From Octopus sinensis (taxonomy: Eukaryota): 15,887 nt of DNA. The position numbers were made by a program, and so were the translations under genes. Every line of letters starts with the position of its first letter. Position 1 is the first letter of the stretch. Location: the NCBI RefSeq assembly GCF_006345805.1, contig NW_021825521.1, positions 1 to 15,887 of the forward strand. The letters run 5' to 3'. This document shows positions 325 to 15,507 of this stretch, piece after piece. Under the pieces are notes generated by a model. The model did no database searches. It was given only the letters and a program-made list of their open reading frames with translations, and was not told the DNA's origin.

Positions 325-770
325 TTGCTATGGCCAATTCGTTTCCATAAAACACAAGCGATGGAAAAATTTATAGAAATCAATGTACCTAACTGATTCC
401 TATAAATTCCCCACTCCCTGAGCTGTTTTGTTTGTCAGAAGGACTGAGAACAGGGCCCATCTCTAATCTCCATTTGAAATGTTAGCTGCAAAAGGAGTCG
501 ATGAAATATATCGCTGAGATTTCATAAAATCTTTGTTGCCATGGATGGAAAAATGGATAAATTAGAAAACACAATAGAGTTAATATTGTCTTTTGGAACC
601 AAGAACTAAGATATGTTGTTGTTAGGGGTAAACAGGTGAACAGAAACTAGAAAAATGTGGACCAAAATCATTAATGGTACCAATTGACCATTGCTGATAG
701 GAATGTCTCTCAATAATGTAAAAAATGCGTTTTTTGAAAGTTTAACTGTAAAGTAATTCTATTAATTAAA

Positions 771-841
771 GAGGTCTGTGTGGTAAGTAGCTTGCTTACC
801 GACCACATGGTTCCGGGTTCAGTCCCACGGCGTGGCACCTT
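771..841 (+). mobile_element. SINE head fragment (tRNA-like region only)
   Basis: Near-identical to the heads of the full copies at 4291, 10763 and 11350 (GTGTGGTAAGTAGCTTGCTTACC...GGTTCAGTCCCAC...GTGGCACCTT). Confidence 0.9.
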
Positions 842-1065
842 AGATGAGTTGATGAGAAAGTTTTTCTTTCTTTCTCTCCCAAGTCCTGGGCTCTGTTTCC
901 CGATAGGTTATTGTTGTTGTTGTTGTTGCCTAGTGAGATATTTGTCGTAACATGTTGCTTCTCGCTGGGGTATCTACCAAGAACATCTCTGATTTGAATA
1001 CATATTGGGGTCATAAAATAACAAAAAATATATTATAAACTCGGTATAAGAATATTGATTTTAAA

Positions 1066-1364: not shown

Positions 1365-2651
1365 CTTTTACCTCTGAAATGTAACCTTATTTTGTCATAG
1401 CATCATCTTCTGCCCTCATCTAAGATTTTACATTGTGCTACCCTCTATGGATTTCTATTGTTTTCTTGGGTATAGGACCATAGCCCTACAATTTGGGATT
1501 ATTGACATCCAACGTCCAGTAATGTTCAGATGTTATTGTTCTACTTTCATTCCGTATCAAACAGTATGTTGTGAAACATATTTCTTTATATATGCGACAC
1601 TAATTAAATTTATTTCATAAAGCATGATAATGACCTTTTTTAATTAGTTAATCTTAATTAGCATAAGGGACAAATGGTATAGTAGTGTTGATGGTGTGGG
1701 ATGTAAGTAGAGTTACATGTTCCTCGTAATCTTCTTCTTATATTGGCATCAGAAAGACAGTCTCTGTCATTTAATGGTGTAACTTTTGTGTTCTCAAATT
1801 TACTTGTGACTGGGTTTTCAAACCTTGGACGTCCACCACAGTCATAGAGGAAACATCAAATGAGTGGGTAAACTTTGACTGCTGTATAAAATAGGGTCAA
1901 CAGAGATACCCTATTTTCTTGAAAACCTGTTCAGGTATATCATTTCAGTTATTTTCACTGTAATAATATATGGATGAACAGTTTCTTATAAGTTGTTAAT
2001 GAGGTGATGTCTTTTAGAACACCTGATATCACCTTCCGTTCCACCTGTGTAAAACTATTCATTGCTCACCATTTAAAAAATAAACTTTTAGGGAGTTTTC
2101 AAATATTTCACTTGACATCCTGTTAAACTGTGATGCAGGCAGTTAAAATTAATGATTACCAGCAGCAACGTTTAACAAAGAGAGGAGTTGTATGTTTATC
2201 CTACTTGAAGTTGTCTGTCGTGTCTGTGGTTAGATCTTTGATGACCAACTTCCCTGACTTTACAATTAAGCAGAAGATAAGACGAATGTTGGTTAGTGAA
2301 ATCTAGAAGTGAGACAACAATGATATGTCATAGATTGGACACAGATAGAAGAACAGAAAGACAGAACTAAGGGGAAACAGTTTTATCAAGTGATAATTAA
2401 ATGAAATAACCGTAACATTGTTAGATTATGTATGATGTCTTAATAGATAGTGGAGATTTAGGACGGTCAGTCAATTTCGTTGTGGACGTAAATACTGAAT
2501 TATCACATGGGGTCACTGTAGAGAGTATAAAAATCTTGACCAAACCCACAGTGTCACCAGTTGACCATTAGTGATAGAAATGTCTAAAAATAAAAGAATA
2601 TAGTTTATTTATAATAAAGAAATACGATTAAATGTAAAACCTTGAAATATC

Positions 2652-2843
2652 GAAGACAGGCAAATACCTAGAAACTGCAGTCCGTGCGTATCACTTAGGT
2701 TGACGAGAGAGGGATGACCTCCCTTTGCAAATATCATAAGGGCACAGAAAGTGTGCCTAAATCCAGCTGGAGACGATGATCTCCTGGGGCTACAAGCTAC
2801 AGTAACAATATGGTTAGCCATATTGAGATGGCTAGTATACTTT
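2652..2843. mobile_element. 192-bp insertion with a 13-bp target-site duplication just upstream of the exon B acceptor
   Basis: ACCTTGAAATATC occurs at 2639-2651 and 2844-2856. Removing the insert restores collinearity with the acceptor region at 5900-5953. Confidence 0.7.
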
Positions 2844-2864
2844 ACCTTGAAATATCTCTTTCAG

Positions 2865-2936
2865 TGTCTCCAAAGTTTGAGGACAAAGGAGTTCAATCAG
2901 ATGCACAGTTATTAGGGGCTACATCCAAGCAAGGTG
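2865..2936 (+). CDS. Internal coding exon B (72 nt, phase 1-1): xSPKFEDKGVQSDAQLLGATSKQG
   Basis: Acceptor tctctttcAG (2863-2864), donor GTGAGT (2937), open frame. Same length as exon C with gapless amino-acid alignment to it. Confidence 0.65.
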
Positions 2937-3699
2937 GTGAGTATAAAATAACAGTTCCCAATTGATTTCTATAAAGTTTACTTACCCTGGGCATATTGTG
3001 CTTGAAAGAATAACTGAAAACATGTTATATTCTTACTCTCAAATTGAAAGATTAGCTGCAAAATAATTGTATTAAAGATATGGATATTACTGAAAGGTCA
3101 TGAAATATCCACCGAGGTAAGCACAGTTTGTAATAATGGATTAAAAAGGCACAACAAAGTTAATTTTATCATTTCCACAGGAAACTAGTGATGTAGTTGA
3201 AGTGTAAACAAGTGAGGAAATTATGATTTTTCCTGTTTATTATTGTGGTTGTTTAGGTAGATGCTTTTCATAATGTGGCAGAATTACTATGAAATATCTT
3301 CCAAGTGTGAACAGCCTGTCGTTTTTCACTGATACTAAATCTATCATTACATCCACTAAACATTGTCTTTATCCAAGCAGAAGACTTTGCTTTCTTGATG
3401 AAACAACCCTTGTTTCTCTTTCTCGCTTGAAGATACAATGCAATGATATGACCTTCATCATTTATGATTTCCATATTCCCATGGGTGGTCACTGTCCAAG
3501 TCAGTTCTTATTGAGAATTACTGCCCAACTTCATTTGTGGAGGAACACATCTCACTAAAATATTTCAGCCTTTCTATGGTGGTAATCCCTTCTTAACATC
3601 GACCTCTTTATAAAGGGTCCTGGGTGCATTTTATGGTGGCACATGTTCTAGAAAGATTGTCATGTCCTCAAAAAACTTAAACGTCCCTTTTTAACTTAT

Positions 3700-5405
3700 T
3701 CAAAGAAATATGAGACATGTTGAAACAGGAAAGGATAGTAAAGGGTATGGAGAGCAGCTTGCTAAGAACCCATATGAGGTTACTCAGAAACAGTTTGCAG
3801 ATACTAAGAGTGGAAAGCTAAAATGCAATAAAGATGCAAAGAGACGGGTTGACACGGGCGTCCTACACTGACACAAAGTGAAATCAAACATTCCCACTCA
3901 TGGACAGTTTGAAATTACCAAGGAAACCAGCAATCAAATATTTCAGCTTGGTGATTTCAGTAAGAAGCAAGTATATAGCTGAGGGAAGAGGACAAGAGCA
4001 AAGAGTGCCCCAGGAGGGGATGGTGTACTATGGAAAGTGTACAAGCATTATACCCAATTGTGTTATAAGTATTACCTACTACTTTGGAAGTTGTGATATA
4101 AAGGTGAACTGGATGGCTGATGCAAGGTAAAAGGAGTTTACTTATCAAAGGGAGCTAAAGGAAAATCGACCGACCAGTTCAGAACAATTCCAACCGTGAA
4201 CGAAGATGGCAAGATTTACATGGGTGTACTTGCTAAGAGATCAACTACATATCTCCAAAATAATGGTTATGGGACGGAAAGTATCCAGACGGCGTAGGAG
4301 TGGCTGTGTGGTAAGTAGCTTGCTTACAAACCACATGGTTCCGGGTTCAGTCCCACTGCGTGGCACCTTGGGCAAGTGTCTTCTACTATAGCCTCGGACC
4401 GAACAAAGCCTTGTGAGTGGATTTGGTAGACGGAAACTGAAATAAACCCGTCGCATATATATACATATGTATGTATGTGTATATGTTTGTGTGTCTGTGT
4501 TTGTTCCCCCAGCATCACTTGACAACCGATGCTGGTTTGTTTACGTCCCCGTAACTTATTTGTTCGAGAAAAGAGACCAATAGAATAAGTACCAGGCTTA
4601 CAAAGAATAAGTCCTGGGGTTGATATGCTCGACTAAAAGCGGTGCTCCAGCATGGCCACAGTCAGCTCACTGAAACAAATAAAAGAGTAAAGAGTAAAAG
4701 AGAGAAGACAGGAATCCCTGAATGTGTGGAACTTGCATTTTGAATCTGGGATGCGATACAAGATACAAAGAAGAACAAAAGCGATTTGAATGTTGTATGG
4801 CTTGATCAGGTTAATGCTTATCGTTCTGTACTACACGAATTGTTGCTGAAAACAACGGACGTCTTTTATATACGAGAAAAGATTAAGAATCTAATGAAGA
4901 GTTGCTGTAATAATTTCAAAATGCGCTTCAGGACAGAATATTTCACAACAGACTCGCATCGTCTGGAGACTGGAATTGCCGTGGGTTGCACAATATCAGT
5001 CATTTTGTTTGTACTTGTTATGGAAATGTTTATTAGATCAGCAGATTGATCAGAAGAAATAACTCGAGTGAAGTCCCCTAAGACGACATTAATGGATGAC
5101 ATAACAACACAAACAACAGAGCAAAAGGATATGCAAATAGTTCTGAATAGACTGTATTAATTAATTAGTTGGTCAAGAATAGGTTTGAAGGCAAATAAAT
5201 GTTGCCGTCATTGGCCAAAGCTCAGCAGAAATAAGTGAAATTCAAAGTAGCAGAAGAAAGCATGTCAAAGGTTAAAGAGAAACTGTTTAGGGTGATGGTA
5301 CACTACCTCATTGTCCCACAAGAGTAGAGGCATCGAGATAATAGCACAAAAAGAAGACATCTTATAAGCAATAGATAAGCCAAAACTTTTGGGGAATAAA
5401 GGGTT
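3700..5405 (+). pseudogene. Decayed non-LTR retrotransposon reverse transcriptase (HERO/R2-like group by motif recall), split by a SINE
   Basis: RAKSAPGGDG (3995+), GVYLSK...QFRTIPTVNEDGKIYMGVLAKR...ESIQ, then after the SINE KTGIP...VVWLDQVNAYRSVLH...GIAVGCTISVILFVLVME...TLMDD (MDD at 5092-5100) and LG*WY. Many stops and frameshifts. The RT call is solid, the clade less so. Confidence 0.85.
4291..4703 (+). mobile_element. Full-length tRNA-derived SINE with internal (TA)/(TG) microsatellite and AAAGAGT tail
   Basis: A-box TGGCTGTGTGG, B-box GGTTCAGTCCC, CORE-like CCTTGGGCAAGTGTCTT. Homologous end to end with 10763-11200 and 11350-11756. Confidence 0.9.
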
Positions 5406-5524
5406 TTAAAGAACTTCTTTATTAAGGAGTCTTAAAATATTTCCTGAATCAGATGATGTTCTTGTGACCTGGGATGTGCGGAGTTACGATTCAAGATTAC
5501 CAACATCAACCCTTCACAAAGATG

Positions 5525-6295
5525 TCAGGTGTATGTTTATCCTACATGAATTTGTCTGCCGTGTATTTGTGGTTAGGTCTTTGGAAACCACCTTGTTTGA
5601 CATTAGAATTAAGCAGAAGATGAGAAAAATGTTGGTGAGTGAAGTCATGTCACAGGTTTGGTACAGATATAAGAAGGGAAATAGAGAACTGTGAGAAAAA
5701 TAGTCTTATCAAATGATAATTAAATGTGACAAATGCAACATTGTTAGATTATGTAGGATGTGTTGATAGAGAGACGAAGTTTAAGAAGTTTAATCTATTT
5801 TGTTGTGGACCAAAATATTGAGCTATTACATAGATTAAAAAGGTTGACCAAAATCATAGTGGTCACCAGTTGACCATTGATGATAAGCATGCCTCAAGAA
5901 TAAAGATTAAGAAATTTAGTATAAATTATAAAATTTGGAAATATTTATTTCAGGGAGTCCACAGCTGAAGGAAAAGGATCTTCTGAGAGTGGCTAAGAGG
6001 TTAGGAAGAGATTGGTGGCAAGTAGGTGAGTATAAAATTACACTACCTAATTGATTTCTATAAATTTTACATTCACCTGAGCTATTTCATTTGTCAGGAT
6101 GAAAGAGAACAGGTTACATTCCTAATTTCCAGTGGAATGGTTAGCTGCAAAATAAATTCTATTAATGATATTACTGGTATTTCATAAAGTATCCACTGAG
6201 GTTGGTAATTATGGATACACAAGAAAATACAAGTAGCATTTAATATTGGAAGAAAGAAGAAAAATATGTTAAGGGTAAACAGCTGAGTTAATGAC
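5525..6295 (+). repeat. Intragenic duplication block 3
   Basis: Collinear with blocks 1 and 2. The first 39 nt after the donor are 35/39 identical to block 2. Confidence 0.9.
5954..6025 (+). CDS. Internal coding exon C (72 nt, phase 1-1), N-terminal helices of a death domain: xSPQLKEKDLLRVAKRLGRDWWQV
   Basis: Acceptor tttatttcAG (5952-5953), donor GTGAGT (6026). DLLRVAKRLGRDW matches the death-domain helix 1-2 pattern (L..ia..lG.dW) and joins in frame to the exon at 7943. Confidence 0.85.
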
Positions 6296-6464: not shown

Positions 6465-6568
6465 AGCGCTGCTTCTGATAGGTCAATCCATGGTGATGAC
6501 CCGAGGTAACGGTGACAGCGCTGCTTCTGATTGGTCAATTCATGGTGATGACCCGAGGTCCCGGTGAC
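6465..6568. repeat. Two tandem 52-bp direct repeats
   Basis: AGCGCTGCTTCTGAT(A/T)GGTCAAT(C/T)CATGGTGATGACCCGAGGT(AA/CC)CGGTGAC at 6465 and 6517. Confidence 0.95.
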
Positions 6569-6664
6569 GGCACTACTTTTGTCATTCATAAGTTACAACT
6601 AAACGTGAAGAATTTAGTTATTGGGTTAATAAAATATGGTCGTTTATTCGTGTGTAATAAATAA

Positions 6665-6804
6665 AATACCAAACTCATTCCCTATGGATACCGTATTTAT
6701 TACAACGAGTGGCTTGTAAACGTATCTAACTTTCGCTCGTTAGATACGTTTACAAGCCACTCGTTGTAATAAATACGGTATCCATAGGGAATTAGTTTGG
6801 TATT
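6665..6804. repeat. Near-perfect inverted repeat: 66-bp arms, 8-nt loop
   Basis: 6665-6730 is the reverse complement of 6739-6804 with one mismatch. The loop is TTTCGCTC. Confidence 0.97.
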
Positions 6805-7184
6805 CTCTCTTTTATATTGCCATATTGAAATGACTTTACCACATGACATATGTTTGTAAATGCTTCAGTAAAAACAGACTTAGTATAGGGGTGACACAGC
6901 CAAATCATATCATATTCCCCACATCCAAAAAGAGAGAATGACTCTAAGGAAATTTGCCAGAAAATGAATATTCACAAGTGAAGCCAGACCATGGCTGGTT
7001 CTCTCTCTCACTGAGACATAAGAATAACTGAATGGGTTCAGGAGAATTGATTGAATCTGGAGTAGATTCAAAAAGGATTGGATTTGACTGAGAATAATCG
7101 ACTGTTGGTCTATCATTATTCATTTGATTTTCAGTGTCATTTTGGGAACTTTGCAAGGTGATTGATTTCACAGAGACATTACTT

Positions 7185-9988: not shown

Positions 9989-9994
9989 TATATA
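9936..9994. repeat. (TA)n microsatellite
   Basis: Direct reading. Confidence 0.95.
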
Positions 9995-10214
9995 CTAAGC
10001 AATTAAGGGTTTAGCAACAAATTGCCTCACCACACACCGAATTTAGAAATAGCAGTCAAAGAGTTATAGCTATTCTTTCTACTAAAAGGGGATCTCAGTT
10101 GCTAAACCCTTAATTGCTTAGTATTACTTAAATTTTCCTCGAATGAGGCTTTTACATGCCGAAATCTACTTGGTGTAATTAATAATTATTCCAAATTAAT
10201 TAATTTCACCCTTT
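9993..10214. mobile_element. Truncated, internally inverted relative of the 594-bp array unit
   Basis: 9993-10097 matches the unit start in array orientation. 10098-10214 is the reverse complement of the unit end plus the next unit start. A 26-bp perfect inverted repeat lies at 9993-10018 and 10098-10123. Both sides are flanked by (TA)n. Confidence 0.9.
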
Positions 10215-10224
10215 ATTGTTACTG

Positions 10225-10251
<27 letters not shown>
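10225..10251. repeat. (TA)n microsatellite
   Basis: Direct reading. Confidence 0.95.
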
Positions 10252-10762: not shown

Positions 10763-10931
10763 CAGGAGTGTCTGTATGGGAAGTAGCTCGCTTACCAACC
10801 ACATGGTTCCGGGTTCAATCCCACTACATGGCACCATGGGCAAATGTCTTCTACCATAGCCTACGGACCGACCAAAGCTTTGTCAGTGGATTTTGTACAC
10901 GGAAACAGAAGGAAGCCCGTCGTATATATGA

Positions 10932-10977
<46 letters not shown>

Positions 10978-11200
10978 GTGTGTGTGTATGTTACTGTGTC
11001 TGTGTTTGTCCTCCCAACATAGTTTCACAACCGATGCTGGTGTGTTTACGTCCCCATAACTTAGCGGTTCGGTATATAAGACCGATAGAATAAGTACTAG
11101 GTTTACAAATAATAGGTCCTCGGGTCGATCTACTGGACAAAAGTCGGTGCTCCAGCAAGGCCACAGTCAAATGACTGAAACATGTAAAAGAGTAAAAGAG
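10763..11200 (+). mobile_element. Full-length tRNA-derived SINE (same family as 4291-4703)
   Basis: End-to-end homology, internal (TA)(TATG)(TG) tract, AAAAGAGT tail. Confidence 0.9.
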
Positions 11201-11216
11201 TATACAATATATATAG

Positions 11217-11259
<43 letters not shown>

Positions 11260-11296: not shown

Positions 11297-11349
11297 TTAT
11301 AATTCGGAATGGTCATTTTGCCAGTTTAGGCAAGAAATATATAAACATA

Positions 11350-11756
11350 GTCGCTGGAGTGGCAGTGTGGCTTGCTAACCAACCACATGGTTCTAGGTTC
11401 AGTCCCACTGCGTGGCATCTTGGGCAAGTGTCTTCTGCTATAGCCCCGGGCCGACCAAAGCCTTTTGAGTGGATTTGGTAGATGGAAACTGAAAGAAGCC
11501 TATCGTATACATGTACATATATATATATGTATGTGTGTGTTTGTGTGTCTGTGTTTGTCCTCCTAGCATTGCTTGACAACCGATGCTGGTGTGTGTACGT
11601 CCCCGTCACTTAGCGGTTCGGCAAAAGAGACCGATAGAATAAGTACTGGTCTTACAAAGAATAAGTCCCGGGGTCGATTTGCTCGACTAAAGGCGGTGCT
11701 CCAGCATGGCCGCAGTCAAATGACTGAAACAAGTAAAAAAAAAAAAGAAAAAAAAA
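11350..11756 (+). mobile_element. Full-length tRNA-derived SINE (same family), with a small deletion after the A-box and an A-rich tail
   Basis: End-to-end homology with 4291-4703 and 10763-11200. Confidence 0.9.
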
Positions 11757-11969
11757 TATATATATATATATAGATATAAGTAATACTAAGCAATAAAGGG
11801 TTTAGCAACGAATTGCCTTACCACATACCGAATTTAGAAATAGCAGTCAAAGAGTTATAGCTATTTCTTCTACTAAAAAGGGAGATCTCAGTAAAAACAG
11901 CAATTGGAAGGCAGACACAAACAGGTAAGAGAGAATGAATTGACGGCAATCTATCATACAATTTTAAGT

Positions 11970-12075
11970 TATCTACGGACGTACGTTTCGAAATCAAGTT
12001 TTTAGGAAAGCATAAGAATTAAATATTAAATAATTCTATCTTACCAAAAACTTCTTTTCTCTTCAGCGTAGAATA
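11970..12075 (-). ncRNA. Type I hammerhead ribozyme, unit 1
   Basis: Minus strand: UAUUCUACG-CUGAAGA-[70-nt stem II, G...C closed]-GAAA-C-GUAC-G-UC/CGUAGAUA. Stem I UCUACG pairs with CGUAGA. Predicted cleavage is between 11978 and 11977. Confidence 0.88.
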
Positions 12076-12563
12076 CTATAATCATAAATGATTATATATT
12101 GAATTTTGAGATACTAGAAGGCACCAACTCAACTCAGTATCAGAGCGAGCTAGAACCCGCAACTAGTATCACCAAATTCAATGCTTGAATGAAAGGATTG
12201 TGTCACCAGCCCCTTCCCACCCGCGTGTAGCCAAAACAAGATGCTGTGGTCATCTACTGAGATAAAATATGGTTATCCGTAATAATGAAGCGTGAAATTA
12301 ATTAATTTGGAATAATTATCAATTACACCAAGTAGTCTTCGGCATGTAAAAGCCTCATTCGAGGAAAATTTAAGTAATACTAAGCAATAAAGGGTTTAGC
12401 AACGAATTGCCTTACCACATACCGAATTTAGAAATAGCAGTCAAAGAGTTATAGCTATTTCTTCTACTAAAAAGGGAGATCTCAGTAAAAACAGCAATTG
12501 GAAGGCAGACACAAACAGGTAAGAGAGAATGAATTGACGGCAATCTATCATACAATTTTAAGT

Positions 12564-12669
12564 TATCCACGGACGTACGTTTCGAAATCAAGTTTTTAGG
12601 AAAGCATAAGAATTAAATATTAAATAATTCTATCTTACCAAAAACTTCTTTTCTCTTCAGCGTAGAATA
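12564..12669 (-). ncRNA. Type I hammerhead ribozyme, unit 2
   Basis: Same core. Stem I has a U-G wobble (CGUGGA). Predicted cleavage 12572/12571. Confidence 0.88.
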
Positions 12670-13154
12670 CTATAATCATAAATGATTATATATTGAATTT
12701 TGAGATACTAGAAGGCACCAACTCAACTCAGTATCAGAGCGAGCTAGAACCCGCAACTAGTATCACCAATTCAATGCTTGAATGAAAGGATTGTGTCACC
12801 AGCCCCTTCCCACCGCGTGTAGCCAAAACAAGATGCTGTGGTCATCTACTGAGATAAAATATGGTTATCCGTATAATGAAGCGTGAAATTAATTAATTTG
12901 GAATAATTATCAATTACACCAAGTAGTCTTCGGCATGTAAAAGCCTCATTCGAGGAAAATTTAAGTAATACTAAGCAATAAAGGGTTTAGCAACGAATTG
13001 CCTTACCACATACCGAATTTAGAAATAGCAGTCAAAGAGTTATAGCTATTTCTTCTACTAAAAAGGGAGATCTCAGTAAAAACAGCAATTGGAAGGCAGA
13101 CACAAACAGGTAAGAGAGAATGAATTGACGGCAATCTATCATACAATTTTAAGT

Positions 13155-13260
13155 TATCCACGGACGTACGTTTCGAAATCAAGTTTTTAGAAAGCATAAG
13201 AATTAAATATTAAATAATTCTATCTTACCAAAAACTTCTTTCTCTCAGCGTAGTAGAATA
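13155..13260 (-). ncRNA. Type I hammerhead motif, unit 3, core one base short
   Basis: Reads CUGAGAG instead of CUGAAGAG, with a 3-nt duplication in the 5' strand of stem I. This is either an inactive copy or a consensus error. Confidence 0.6.
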
Positions 13261-13756
13261 CTATAATCATAAATGATTATATATTGAATTTTGAGATACT
13301 AGAAGGCACCAACTCAACTCAGTATCAGAGCGAGCTAGAACCCGCAACTAGTATCACCAAATTCAATGCTTGAATGAAAGGATTGTGTCACCAGCCCCTT
13401 CCCACCGCGTGTAGCCAAAACAAGATGCTGTGGTCATCTACTGAGATAAAATATGGTTATCCGTAATAATGAAGGGTGAAGGTGAAATTAATTAATTGGA
13501 ATAATTATCAATTACACCAAGTAGTCTTCGGCATGTAAAAGCCTCATTCGAGGAAAATTTAAGTAATACTAAGCAATAAAGGGTTTAGCAACGAATTGCC
13601 TTACCACATACCGAATTTAGATTAGAAATAGCAGTCAAAGAGTTATAGCTATTTCTTCTACTAAAAAGGGAGATCTCAGTAAAAACAGCAATAGGAAGGC
13701 AGACACAAACAGGTAGAGAGAATGAATTGACGGCAATCTATCATACAATTTTAAGT

Positions 13757-13861
13757 TATCTACGGACGTACGTTTCGAAATCAAGTTTTTAGGAAGCATA
13801 AGAATTAAATATTAAATAATTCTATCTTACCAAAAACTTCTTTTCTCTTCAGCGTAGAATA
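13757..13861 (-). ncRNA. Type I hammerhead ribozyme, unit 4
   Basis: Intact CUGAAGA, GAAA and GUC, Watson-Crick stem I. Predicted cleavage 13765/13764. Confidence 0.88.
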
Positions 13862-14345
13862 CTATAATCATAAATGATTATATATGAATTTTGAGATACT
13901 AGAAGGCACCAACTCAACTCAGTATCAGAGCGAGCTAGAACCCGCAACTAGTTTCACCAAATTCAATGCTTGAATGAAAGGATTGTGTCACCAGCCCCTT
14001 CCCACCCGCGTGTAGCCAAAACAAGATGCTGTGGTCATCTACTGAGATAAAATATGGTTATCCGTATAATGAAGGGTGAAATTAATTAATTTGGAATAAT
14101 ATCAATTACACCAAGTAGTCTTCGGCATGTAAAAGCCTCATTCGAGGAAAATTTAAGTAATACTAAGCATAAAGGGTTTAGCAACGAATTGCCTTACCAC
14201 ATACCGAATTTAGAAATAGCAGTCAAAGAGTTATAGCTATTTCTTCTACTAAAAAGGGAGATCTCAGTAAAAACAGCAATTGGAAGGCAGACACAAACAG
14301 GTAAGAGAGAATGAATTGACGGCAATCTATCATACAATTTTAAGT

Positions 14346-14451
14346 TATCCACGGACGTACGTTTCGAAATCAAGTTTTAAGGAAAGCATAAGAATTAAAT
14401 ATTAAATAATTCTATCTTACCAAAAACTTCTTTTCTCTTCAGCGTAGAATA
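14346..14451 (-). ncRNA. Type I hammerhead ribozyme, unit 5
   Basis: Intact core, U-G wobble in stem I. Predicted cleavage 14354/14353. Confidence 0.88.
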
Positions 14452-14767
14452 CTATAATCATAAATGATTATATATTGAATTTTGAGATACTAGAAGGCAC
14501 CAACTCAACTCAGTATCAGAGCGAGCTAGAACCCGCAACTAGTTTCACCAAATTCAATGCTTGAATGAAAGGATTGTGTCACCAGCCCCTTCCCACCCGC
14601 GTGTAGCCAAAACAAGATGCTGTGGTCATCTACTGAGATAAAATATAGTTATCCGTAATAATGAAGGGTGAAATTAATTAATTTGGAATAATTATCAATT
14701 ACACCAAGTAGTCTTCGGCATGTAAAAGCCTCATTCGAGGAAAATTTAAGTAATACTAAGCAATAAA

Positions 14768-14908
14768 TGTATCTATATATCTATATATCTATCTATCTAT
14801 TTATCTATCTATCTTTATATATACCTTTATAAATGTCTATATATATCTTTATACATACATACATACATACTACATACTACATACATAATACATACATACA
14901 TACATAGG
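14768..14908. repeat. (TATC)n/(TACA)n compound microsatellite
   Basis: Direct reading; abuts the array end. Confidence 0.9.
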
Positions 14909-15318
14909 TTGTATATACTCAGACACGCATATCTGAAACAAAATAATAACAAAGGTTTGTACTAGATATTGTTGTTACTTTATATAGTTGTGGTGTGTAA
15001 TTAAATGTAAATTATAAGCTAGTCGATGTTTAATTGTTAAAGGTATCAGCAGGAAGCTTGCATGCGTATGTGGTGTCTCTTGGTGTGCCAATGCTCGTGT
15101 CCCCTTCGCAAGCGAAAAACGAACCCATTTTTCAATTTGAAACTCTCACGTCGTTTTTATGGACGCAAGGGAAGTGATTCTAGATGTTATTTTTTATACC
15201 CTCCAGGCTTCATCAGGTGTCTTGGGGAAATTTGAAACCTGAGTTCACATTCCTAAGGTATTTTATGTACCTGTATCTCTACTTATATTTCTCTCTTCCT
15301 CTCTCTCTACTCGCACTC

Positions 15319-15341
15319 ATATATGTATATATACGATATAT

Positions 15342-15422
<81 letters not shown>

Positions 15423-15507
15423 TATATATATATATATATATATAATATATATAGAGAGAGAGAGAGAGAGAGATAGATAGATAGATAGATAGATAGACAG
15501 ACAGACA
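15319..15507. repeat. (TA)n-(GA)n-(GATA)n-(GACA)n compound microsatellite
   Basis: Direct reading; it explains the spurious YI-rich ORFs. Confidence 0.95.

What the first reader, a model, noticed from the sequence alone, without database searches (positions are those of the whole stretch)
11777..14767. 594-bp tandem array with a self-cleaving hammerhead ribozyme motif in every unit (retrozyme-like system)
Seen in sequence: on the minus strand, units 1, 2, 4 and 5 have the full type I hammerhead core (CUGAAGA, a G-C-closed stem II, GAAA, a 2-bp stem III with a GUAC loop, a GUC cleavage triplet and a 6-bp stem I). Unit 3 has a core one base short. Established: hammerhead-bearing tandem repeats (newt satellite 2, schistosome Sm-alpha, cricket pDo500, metazoan non-LTR retrozymes, Penelope pLTRs) yield monomeric and often circular RNAs. 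Inference: a minus-strand transcript would be cut into ~594-nt monomers that may circularise and be mobilised in trans by an autonomous RT. The unit is longer than the non-LTR retrozyme monomers I recall, and I cannot tell whether this family has been described.
Basis: partly seen in the sequence, partly recalled or inferred. Interest (0 to 1): 0.92.

Follow-up and report, generated by a model that had tools for sequence, protein, structure and literature searches.

The report
Hammerhead-ribozyme tandem repeat (animal retrozyme type)
A five-copy, roughly 594-bp non-coding tandem repeat carries a complete type I hammerhead self-cleaving RNA motif in four of its copies and looks like an ordinary animal "non-LTR retrozyme"; its one unusual feature is a very long second helix that hides the ribozyme from standard database scans.

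Summary
Window 11777-14767 is a 5.04-unit tandem array with cleavage-site spacings of 594, 591, 602 and 589 bp. Units are about 95-99% alike, 35% G+C and non-coding. On the minus strand, units 1, 2, 4 and 5 carry a full type I hammerhead: CUGAAGA, a G-C-closed helix II, GAAA, a 2-bp helix III with a GUAC loop, GUC and a 6-bp helix I. Unit 3 is broken. No match this good appeared in 1500 window shuffles.

Rfam Hammerhead_1 does not reach its gathering score. On a 136-nt slice it aligns end to end at exactly these coordinates (20.9 bits against 34). The score is low because helix II holds a 66-nt insertion.

The hammerhead helices form in unconstrained folds, even in the full 594-nt monomer (z = -5.95). 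Two copies co-fold into a double hammerhead through the ACGUACGU palindrome.

The array sits in a (TA)n tract. A second, inverted and 5'-truncated fragment of the unit sits in another (TA)n tract 1.7 kb away. Both are published hallmarks of Penelope-like-element insertion.

Best reading: a non-LTR retrozyme array, a new member of a known kind. Its size is inside the published range of 51-972 bp. Cleavage, transcription, circular RNA and conservation in other copies are untested, and no relatives were found outside the window.

The parts
11777..14767 (-). Tandem array of 5 units plus a 21-nt terminal redundancy. It is non-coding and 34.7% G+C. The ribozyme-bearing (sense) strand is the minus strand.
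11972..12072 (-). Unit 1 type I hammerhead (101 nt). Predicted cleavage lies between 11978 and 11977.
   Evidence: Descriptor hit; Rfam RF00163 at 20.9 bits covering the full model; the unconstrained MFE fold forms helices I and II
12566..12666 (-). Unit 2 type I hammerhead. Cleavage after 12572. Helix I carries a U-G pair where unit 1 has U-A.
13157..13257 (-). Unit 3 defective hammerhead: TAC duplication in helix I, core CUGAGAG (one A lost), one A lost in helix II. The GAAACGUACGUC half is intact.
   Evidence: no Hammerhead_1 hit under the same conditions that detect unit 1
13759..13858 (-). Unit 4 type I hammerhead. Cleavage after 13765.
14348..14448 (-). Unit 5 type I hammerhead. Cleavage after 14354.
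14747..14767 (-). 21-nt terminal redundancy (TTTATTGCTTAGTATTACTTA). The array starts and ends with the same string, at monomer positions 181-201 counted from the cleavage site.
11735..11776 (.). Insertion target on the low-coordinate side: the A-rich tail plus (TA)8 of a SINE-like repeat (about 11350-11735, + strand), directly abutting the array.
14768..14820 (.). (TATC/TATA)n microsatellite abutting the other end of the array.
9992..10099 (-). Solo fragment A of the same family: monomer positions 86-195, 92% identical. Its sense 3' end abuts (TA)30 and lies within 6 nt of the array's 3' terminus.
10098..10227 (+). Solo fragment B, inverted relative to A: monomer positions 169-298, 94% identical. 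Its sense 3' end abuts (AT)13. The 5' ends of A and B meet in the middle.

Best explanation
The array is a genomic copy of a non-autonomous, hammerhead-bearing tandem retroelement of the animal "non-LTR retrozyme" type. These elements are now argued to derive from Penelope-like-element (PLE) terminal repeats.

Shown here: a 5-unit non-coding AT-rich array; a complete type I hammerhead with the canonical metazoan geometry in four units (helix I 6 bp, helix II 4 bp up to the first loop, helix III 2 bp with a palindromic tetraloop); a monomer RNA far more self-paired than shuffled controls; and insertion into (TA)n, with a second inverted, 5'-truncated copy nearby.

Inferred mechanism:
1. A minus-strand transcript runs through the array.
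2. Because helix III is weak, neighbouring hammerheads pair through the ACGUACGU palindrome into a double hammerhead and cut after GUC.
3. This releases monomers of 589 and 594 nt, plus an 1193-nt dimer across the dead unit 3, with 5'-OH and 2',3'-cyclic phosphate ends.
4. An RtcB-type tRNA ligase closes them into circles.
5. A PLE reverse transcriptase with its GIY-YIG endonuclease, supplied in trans from elsewhere in the genome, copies the circle or a multimer more than once round and inserts the tandem cDNA at (TA)n.

The one unusual feature is helix II. After the 4-bp stem it continues through a 2x2 internal loop into an imperfect hairpin extension of about 58 nt, where other type I hammerheads end in a small loop.
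For: - Array and unit structure.
- No open frame longer than 68 aa in the array.
- G+C 0.347.
- Descriptor hits only in units 1, 2, 4 and 5 on the minus strand, and nowhere else in the window.
- 0/1500 window shuffles and 2/20000 unit shuffles are as good.
- Rfam RF00163 aligns over all 45 model positions at 11972-12072(-), with every core base matched and a 66-nt insertion where the model has 10. The broken unit 3 gives no such hit.
- Five metagenome matches to the bare linear pattern CTGAAGAG-N50-80-CGAAACGTACGTC all lack helices I and II (helix I 0-3 bp, helix II 1 bp). The helices here are therefore not a by-product of the core string.
- Unconstrained MFE folds form helices I and II in a 126-nt slice (z -2.3) and in the whole 594-nt monomer.
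- Monomer z = -5.95 on the minus strand against -3.44 on the plus strand.
- Two hammerheads co-fold into a double hammerhead with an 8-bp helix III: -55.4 against 2 x -21.5 kcal/mol.
- The only polymorphism in helix I (A/G) changes U-A to U-G and keeps the pair.
- The geometry matches the published canonical metazoan type I hammerhead (PMC4209133).
- The array meets the operational retrozyme definition: a tandem repeat with at least 2 consecutive complete hammerheads (preprint 10.64898/2026.07.22.740005). Its size lies within the reported 51-972 bp.
- (TA)n targets, tandem or inverted 5'-truncated insertions and short terminal 'tails' are described for PLEs (PMC8557442). All three are seen here.
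Against: - The Rfam gathering score is not reached (20.9 against 34 bits). The hit is lost completely when 3.5 kb or the whole window is searched.
- No related copy was found outside the window. Covariation and conservation of the core relative to the flanks are therefore untested.
- Inside the array the hammerhead region varies at least as much as the rest: 10/102 against 23/501 variable columns, largely because of unit 3.
- Loop 2 is not a hairpin loop, so the usual loop1-loop2 tertiary contacts cannot be read off.
- No PLE RT or GIY-YIG domain is present in the window. The only RT remnant is LINE/R2-like.
- The array ends lie at monomer positions 181 and 201, not at the cleavage site.
- There is no expression evidence of any kind.
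Confidence: 0.7

Rival explanations
1. Chance motif. The array is an ordinary satellite or tandem duplication, and its hammerhead-like string has no catalytic role.
For: The per-unit chance rate is about 1e-4, so a gigabase genome should hold hundreds of chance matches to a relaxed descriptor, and the window may have been picked because of the motif. Rfam is sub-threshold. The motif shows no extra conservation inside the array. The helix II arm is about 70 nt, unlike described type I hammerheads.
Against: The motif coincides with exactly the context that defines retrozymes: a tandem repeat that is AT-rich and non-coding. Its geometry is the canonical 6/4/2-bp arrangement with a palindromic helix III loop. 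The helices are kept in the global MFE of the whole monomer. Real chance matches to the core string have no helices. The insertion hallmarks point to a retroelement rather than a slippage product.
Confidence: 0.1
2. The ribozyme family is real, but this array grew at the DNA level. A single retrozyme or PLE terminal-repeat insertion was amplified by unequal crossing-over or replication slippage, not by rolling-circle reverse transcription, and is now a silent relic.
For: Two substitutions are shared by neighbouring units (units 1-2 against 3-5 at column 107; units 4-5 against 1-3 at column 230). Six of 33 variable columns are shared between units in mutually incompatible patterns. This does not fit a single circle copied five times followed by independent decay. 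Unit 3 is dead.
Against: The array starts and ends at the same unit position with a 21-nt redundancy and abuts (TA)n on both sides. That fits one more-than-unit-length cDNA. The solo fragment shares the same 3' terminus to within 6 nt. Three of the shared variants are homopolymer-length changes that can recur. Copying a heterogeneous multimeric transcript would produce the same mosaic.
Confidence: 0.15
3. The array is a satellite carried by a rolling-circle DNA transposon (Helitron/Helentron type), which also inserts at A/T sites and spreads tandem arrays in molluscs.
For: Insertion into (TA)n; tandem organisation; a dispersed second fragment.
Against: The array has no 5'-TC or 3'-CTRR termini and no sub-terminal 3' hairpin at either end, on either strand (sequence read). 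No Rep/helicase remnant is present in the window. The solo copy has both 3' ends facing outward and its 5' ends joined, which is the signature of target-primed reverse transcription. This model would also leave the complete hammerhead unexplained.
Confidence: 0.05

Closest known systems
Metazoan non-LTR retrozymes (Cervera & de la Pena 2020, PMC7229834; coral, mussel, axolotl; newt satellite 2 belongs here)
   Same: Head-to-tail repeats with one type I hammerhead per unit. Low G+C. No LTR, PBS, PPT or ORF. Weak helix III with a palindromic loop that allows dimeric action. A highly self-paired monomer RNA.
   Different: The unit is 589-602 bp against the 150-450 bp quoted in 2020, although it lies inside the 51-972 bp range of the 2026 preprint. 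Helix II is extended to about 70 nt instead of ending in a small loop 2, so the known loop1-loop2 contacts cannot be assigned. Expression and circles are not shown here.
[quoted passage not shown] 2017; PMC8557442)
   Same: Type I topology, action as dimers, and a longer-than-usual helix II. The insertion features also match: (TA)n targets, tandem and inverted 5'-truncated copies, and a short terminal extension.
   Different: PLE hammerheads are mostly 'minimal', with helix III absent and helix I 4-5 bp. This one keeps a canonical 6-bp helix I and a 2-bp helix III with a tetraloop. No RT/GIY-YIG ORF lies between or beside the repeats.
Rfam RF00163 Hammerhead_1
   Same: All 45 consensus positions align. 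The core is CUGAnGAG...CGAAACG..CGUC with helix I of 6 bp.
   Different: The score is 20.9 bits, below the 34-bit gathering threshold, because of a 66-nt insertion in loop II. The hit is invisible in window-scale scans.
Plant LTR retrozymes (PMC4918200)
   Same: A non-autonomous element whose RNA is cut by hammerheads into a circular RNA of about 600-1000 nt. The monomer size is similar.
   Different: Plant elements use type III hammerheads inside two LTRs, have a PBS and PPT, exceed 55% G+C, produce 4-bp target-site duplications and depend on Gypsy-type RTs. None of this is seen here.

Membership tests
Type I hammerhead ribozyme | Conserved core CUGANGA ... GAAA ... with cleavage after UH (here GUC) | tested here: met
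   Present in units 1, 2, 4 and 5. Unit 3 fails: its core reads CUGAGAG.
Type I hammerhead ribozyme | Three helices around the core, with helix I open-ended | tested here: met
   Helix I is 6 bp (plus 3 bp beyond a 2x2 loop). Helix II is 4 bp plus an extension. Helix III is 2 bp plus a GUAC loop. Helices I and II appear in unconstrained MFE folds.
Type I hammerhead ribozyme | Reaches the Rfam RF00163 gathering score (34 bits) | tested here: not met
   No hit at gathering or at E<=10 on 3.5 kb. A 136-nt slice gives 20.9 bits, E 0.005, over the full model length. The shortfall is explained by the 66-nt insertion in loop II.
Type I hammerhead ribozyme | Canonical metazoan geometry: helix I 6 bp, helix II 4 bp, helix III 1-2 bp with a 2-4 nt palindromic loop (PMC4209133) | tested here: met
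   The helix lengths are 6, 4 and 2 bp, with a GUAC loop inside the ACGUACGU palindrome. Loop 2 is an internal loop leading into a further hairpin rather than a terminal loop.
Type I hammerhead ribozyme | Loop1-loop2 tertiary contacts | tested here: inconclusive
   Internal loops sit at the expected distances from the core: after 6 bp in helix I and after 4 bp in helix II. Their bases could not be matched to known contact motifs.
Type I hammerhead ribozyme | Helices supported by covariation among homologues | tested here: inconclusive
   Only one informative change, U-A to U-G in helix I. No homologues were found outside the window.
Type I hammerhead ribozyme | Site-specific self-cleavage | not testable with these tools
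   Needs in vitro transcription of monomer and dimer constructs.
Metazoan non-LTR retrozyme | Tandem repeat with at least two consecutive units that each carry a complete type I hammerhead (10.64898/2026.07.22.740005) | tested here: met
   Units 1-2 and units 4-5 qualify. Hammerhead MFE is -21.5 kcal/mol, below the preprint's -5 cut-off.
Metazoan non-LTR retrozyme | Low G+C (<45-50%), no LTR/PBS/PPT, non-coding | tested here: met
   G+C is 0.347. The longest open frame is 68 aa, with no homologue in the protein collection. No terminal repeats other than the unit itself.
Metazoan non-LTR retrozyme | Monomer size in the described range | tested here: met
   The units are 589-602 bp. That is outside the 150-450 bp of PMC7229834 and inside the 51-972 bp of the 2026 preprint.
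Metazoan non-LTR retrozyme | Stable, highly self-paired monomer RNA | tested here: met
   MFE -166 kcal/mol, z = -5.95, 66% of bases paired, in both linear and circular folds.
Metazoan non-LTR retrozyme | Dispersed copies, as evidence of mobility | tested here: inconclusive
   One further fragment, 92-94% identical, lies in a separate (TA)n tract 1.7 kb away. The genome-wide copy number is unknown.
Metazoan non-LTR retrozyme | Expressed as linear and circular RNA of monomer length | not testable with these tools
   No transcript data are available.
Metazoan non-LTR retrozyme | Co-occurrence with autonomous Penelope-like elements in the genome | not testable with these tools
   Only 15.9 kb is available. 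It contains no PLE domain, and the source organism was not identified.
Penelope-like element (autonomous copy with pseudo-LTRs) | RT plus GIY-YIG ORF flanked by the repeats | tested here: not met
   The units abut each other with no ORF between them. The only RVT_1 hit in the window is a LINE/R2-like remnant at 4744-5046.
Helitron/Helentron-borne tandem array | 5'-TC ... CTRR-3' termini with a sub-terminal hairpin; Rep/helicase | tested here: not met
   The termini read TAAGTAAT...GCAATAAA on the plus strand and TTTATTGC...TTACTTA on the minus strand. There is no Rep/helicase domain.

The most novel reading that the evidence does not exclude
This may be a distinct, so far unseen subclass of animal hammerhead retroelement. 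Helix II has grown into an arm of about 70 nt, so the tertiary contacts, if any, come from internal loops rather than from a terminal loop 2. Rfam-based and classical descriptor-based censuses would systematically miss such elements. The host lineage, possibly a cephalopod (from my unverified recollection of the flanking SINE), has no retrozyme reported in the papers I could search. The element also appears to home into the (TA)n tails of SINEs.
Probability: 0.25. Interest if true: 0.5.

Novelty: new member of a known kind. Interest (0 to 1): 0.35.

Why it matters
If the ribozyme is active, this locus adds a family of roughly 590-nt units to the animal retrozymes. It also shows that a canonical type I hammerhead can tolerate a 66-nt extension of helix II. 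Such variants fall below Rfam's threshold and outside most descriptors, so censuses of hammerheads and retrozymes in animal genomes may undercount. The two insertions, both in (TA)n and one with an inverted 5'-truncated structure, are a small piece of sequence-level support for the recent claim that retrozymes are mobilised by, and derive from, Penelope-like elements. It does not open a new question.

Tried and rejected
- TRF found only microsatellites because its period is capped at 500. The repeat finder was needed.
- Rfam at gathering on the whole window gave nothing. At E<=10 on 3.5 kb it gave only weak miRNA/sRNA noise. The MH_s25 hits at 22 bits against a 114-bit threshold are chance.
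- Related copies, protein route: the 64-aa ORF of the unit and a six-frame translation of the whole unit found no homologue in the 5.8-billion-protein collection.
- Related copies, DNA route: a non-ribozyme 24-mer found nothing in viral contigs or metagenome contigs. The ribozyme pattern found nothing in viral contigs. In metagenomes it found five hits that are chance matches in GC-rich prokaryote-like DNA with no helices.
- Organism identification failed. RT-fragment homologues come only from unnamed ENA metagenome assemblies. There is no DNA similarity between the window and the fetched loci. SINE strings occur in no searchable paper. ARAGORN finds no tRNA. My recollection that the flanking SINE is cephalopod is unverified.
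- Literature searches for hammerhead or retrozyme together with octopus or cephalopod found only a PLE paper.
- A PLE partner in the window is rejected. Pfam on 30 open segments gives only one RVT_1 hit, and its closest solved structures are R2 and LINE-1 RTs.
- A ribozyme on the plus strand: no Rfam hit of any ribozyme family.
Full report
THE OBSERVATION

The array is real. The repeat finder reports five in-register copies between 11777 and 14767, with spacings of 594, 591, about 600 and about 590 bp. A MAFFT alignment of the five units has 95% mean column identity, and most differences are small indels. TRF missed the array only because its longest period is 500.

The 21-nt string TTTATTGCTTAGTATTACTTA (minus strand) opens every unit and also closes the array, so the array is five units plus 21 nt. 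It is 34.7% G+C. It has no open frame longer than 68 aa.

THE HAMMERHEAD

I wrote a type I descriptor: helix I, CUGANGA, helix II, GAAA, helix III, UH, helix I. I ran it on both strands of the whole window. It hits four times, all on the minus strand, at 12072-11972, 12666-12566, 13858-13759 and 14448-14348.

Each hit has these features:
- Helix I of 6 bp.
- A G10.1-C11.1 pair closing helix II.
- Helix III made of A15.1-U16.1 and C-G, with a GUAC loop.
- A GUC triplet.

Unit 3 (13257-13157) keeps the GAAACGUACGUC half. Its 5' half has a TAC duplication in helix I, a core that reads CUGAGAG, and one A missing from helix II.

CHANCE

- None of 1500 dinucleotide-preserving shuffles of the window (array collapsed to one unit) gave a match as good.
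- 22 of those 1500 gave a match to a relaxed version of the descriptor.
- 2 of 20000 shuffles of the unit gave a match as good.

A rate of about 1e-4 per unit means that chance matches exist somewhere in any large genome. Statistics alone do not settle the matter.

One control helps. A scan of 241 million metagenome records for the bare string CTGAAGAG-N50-80-CGAAACGTACGTC returned five matches, close to my rough estimate of about seven from random expectation. None of them has helices: helix I is 0-3 bp and helix II is 1 bp. The helices in the window are therefore an independent feature.

- At gathering thresholds there is no hit in the window.
- At E<=10 on 11500-15000 there is still no hammerhead.
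- On the 136-nt slice 11955-12090, RF00163 Hammerhead_1 aligns to 12072-11972(-) over all 45 model positions. The score is 20.9 bits (gathering 34) and E is 0.005.
- In that alignment every core base matches, and a 66-nt insertion sits where the model expects 10 nt in loop II.
- The same search on unit 3 finds no hammerhead.

So the motif is recognised by the curated model in shape. It fails the curated score because of the long helix II.

STRUCTURE

Unconstrained MFE folding of a 126-nt slice gives helix I as 6 bp, a 2x2 internal loop and 3 more bp. It gives helix II as 4 bp, a 2x2 internal loop (A·A and G·G) and an imperfect extension of about 58 nt. The energy is -24 kcal/mol, with z = -2.3.

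The same two helices survive in the MFE of the complete 594-nt monomer, folded either as a linear or as a circular molecule. In that fold 66% of bases are paired.

The monomer is much more stable than shuffled controls on the ribozyme strand (-166 kcal/mol, z = -5.95). It is less so on the other strand (z = -3.44).

Helix III lies inside the 8-nt palindrome ACGUACGU. Two hammerhead copies co-fold into a double hammerhead with an 8-bp intermolecular helix III, at -55.4 kcal/mol against -43.0 for two separate monomers.

This matches the published description of canonical metazoan type I hammerheads: helix I 6 bp, helix II 4 bp, helix III 1-2 bp with a 2-4 nt palindromic loop, active as dimers in tandem repeats (PMC4209133; PMC7229834).

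SURROUNDINGS

On the low-coordinate side the array abuts (TA)8, which follows the A-rich tail of a SINE-like repeat. On the other side it abuts a (TATC/TATA)n tract.

A second piece of the family lies 1.7 kb away, between (TA)30 and (AT)13. Numbering the monomer from the cleavage site:
- Window 9992-10099 is monomer positions 86-195 on the minus strand, 92% identical.
- Window 10098-10227 is positions 169-298 on the plus strand, 94% identical.

The two pieces are inverted relative to each other. Their sense 3' ends face outward into the microsatellite and their 5' ends meet in the middle. That is the pattern left by two opposed target-primed cDNAs. The 3' end of the first piece (position 195) is within 6 nt of the array's 3' terminus (position 201).

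Craig et al. (PMC8557442) list the following as typical of Penelope-like elements: (TA)n as a preferred target, tandem insertions, an adjacent inverted 5'-truncated copy, and a short terminal extension. No PLE RT or GIY-YIG domain is present in the window. The one RVT_1 match, at 4744-5046(+), resembles R2 and LINE-1 RTs.

WHAT IT IS AND HOW IT MOST LIKELY WORKS

The locus meets the operational definition of an "active" non-LTR retrozyme used in the 2026 preprint: a tandem repeat with at least two consecutive units carrying complete type I hammerheads and a hammerhead MFE below -5 kcal/mol.

The inferred cycle is as follows:
1. The minus strand is transcribed through the array.
2. Double hammerheads cleave it into monomers of 589 and 594 nt, plus an 1193-nt dimer spanning the dead unit 3.
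3. An RtcB-type ligase circularises the monomers. PMC7229834 showed this for mussel and axolotl elements.
4. A PLE RT/endonuclease supplied in trans performs more-than-unit-length reverse transcription.
5. The cDNA integrates at (TA)n.

Only the sequence architecture and the insertion signatures are shown here. Every biochemical step is inference.

WEAK POINTS

- The Rfam threshold is not met.
- No relatives were found outside the window by protein search or by DNA scans, so conservation and covariation are untested.
- Inside the array the hammerhead region is not better conserved than the rest: 10 of 102 variable columns against 23 of 501. This is expected for neutrally decaying genomic copies, but it gives no support.
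- The only helix polymorphism, U-A to U-G in helix I, is compatible with pairing but is weak evidence.
- Six of 33 variable columns are shared between units in incompatible patterns. This does not fit a single circle copied five times. It suggests copying of a heterogeneous multimer, template switching, or later DNA-level exchange.

COMPARISON AND NOVELTY

The unit length does not set this element apart. The 2020 paper quotes 150-450 bp, but the 2026 preprint reports 51-972 bp, with a mean of 650 bp in ray-finned fishes.

The real difference is helix II, which is extended to about 70 nt where other type I hammerheads have a small loop 2. PLE hammerheads have a "larger than usual" helix II of 7-8 bp, but nothing that long turned up in the papers I read.

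I could not identify the source organism. My recollection that the flanking SINE is cephalopod is unverified. Searches for hammerhead or retrozyme together with octopus or cephalopod returned only the PLE paper.

I file the locus as a new member of a known kind, with a structural variant worth a bench test. Interest is about 0.35.

Noticed in passing
window 9992-10227: A solo fragment of the same repeat family sits between (TA)30 and (AT)13. It consists of two inverted, overlapping, 5'-truncated pieces (monomer positions 86-195 and 169-298) with their 3' ends facing outward. It lacks the hammerhead region.
   Followed up: yes
window 768-866, 4296-4724, 10764-11229, 11348-11735 (+ strand): Four copies (73-89% alike) of a SINE-like repeat. 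It has a tRNA-like box (GGTTCCGGGTTCAGTCCCAC), an internal (TG/TA)n tract and an A-rich/(TA)n tail. ARAGORN calls no tRNA. The retrozyme array is inserted in the tail of the last copy. From memory it resembles an abundant cephalopod SINE; this is not verified.
   Followed up: partly
window 4744-5046 (+): A decayed reverse-transcriptase fragment (Pfam RVT_1, E 1.3e-7). Its closest solved structures are R2 and LINE-1 RTs, so it is a LINE remnant and not a Penelope-like partner. Its only database relatives (54-57% identical) are unnamed proteins on short ENA metagenome contigs, probably host DNA.
   Followed up: partly
window 2108-3066 and 5449-6155: Two diverged direct copies (73-80% identical, in several blocks) of an unidentified element of about 1 kb, roughly 3.3 kb apart, flanking the LINE remnant.
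   Followed up: no
window 6655-6730 / 6739-6814: A near-perfect hairpin: 76-nt arms, 93% complementary, 8-nt loop. It could be a small foldback or MITE-like element.
   Followed up: no
window 6465-6568: A 52-bp unit repeated twice in tandem (92% match).
   Followed up: no
window 11777-14767 (alignment A1): Among 33 variable alignment columns, 6 are shared by two units in mutually incompatible patterns ({1,2},{4,5},{1,4},{2,4},{2,3},{3,4}). Units 3 and 4 each carry a private 5-6 nt duplication. The array is a mosaic rather than five independent descendants of one template.
   Followed up: partly
window 15319-15505 and 14851-14906: Long compound microsatellites downstream of the array: (AT)68, (AG)n, (ATAG)n and (ATAC)15. 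The whole 9.9-15.9 kb stretch is microsatellite-rich.
   Followed up: no
L001-L005 (metagenome contigs): Five exact matches to the linear hammerhead core pattern lie in GC-rich, apparently prokaryotic DNA. None can form helices I or II. They served as a chance-match control.
   Followed up: yes
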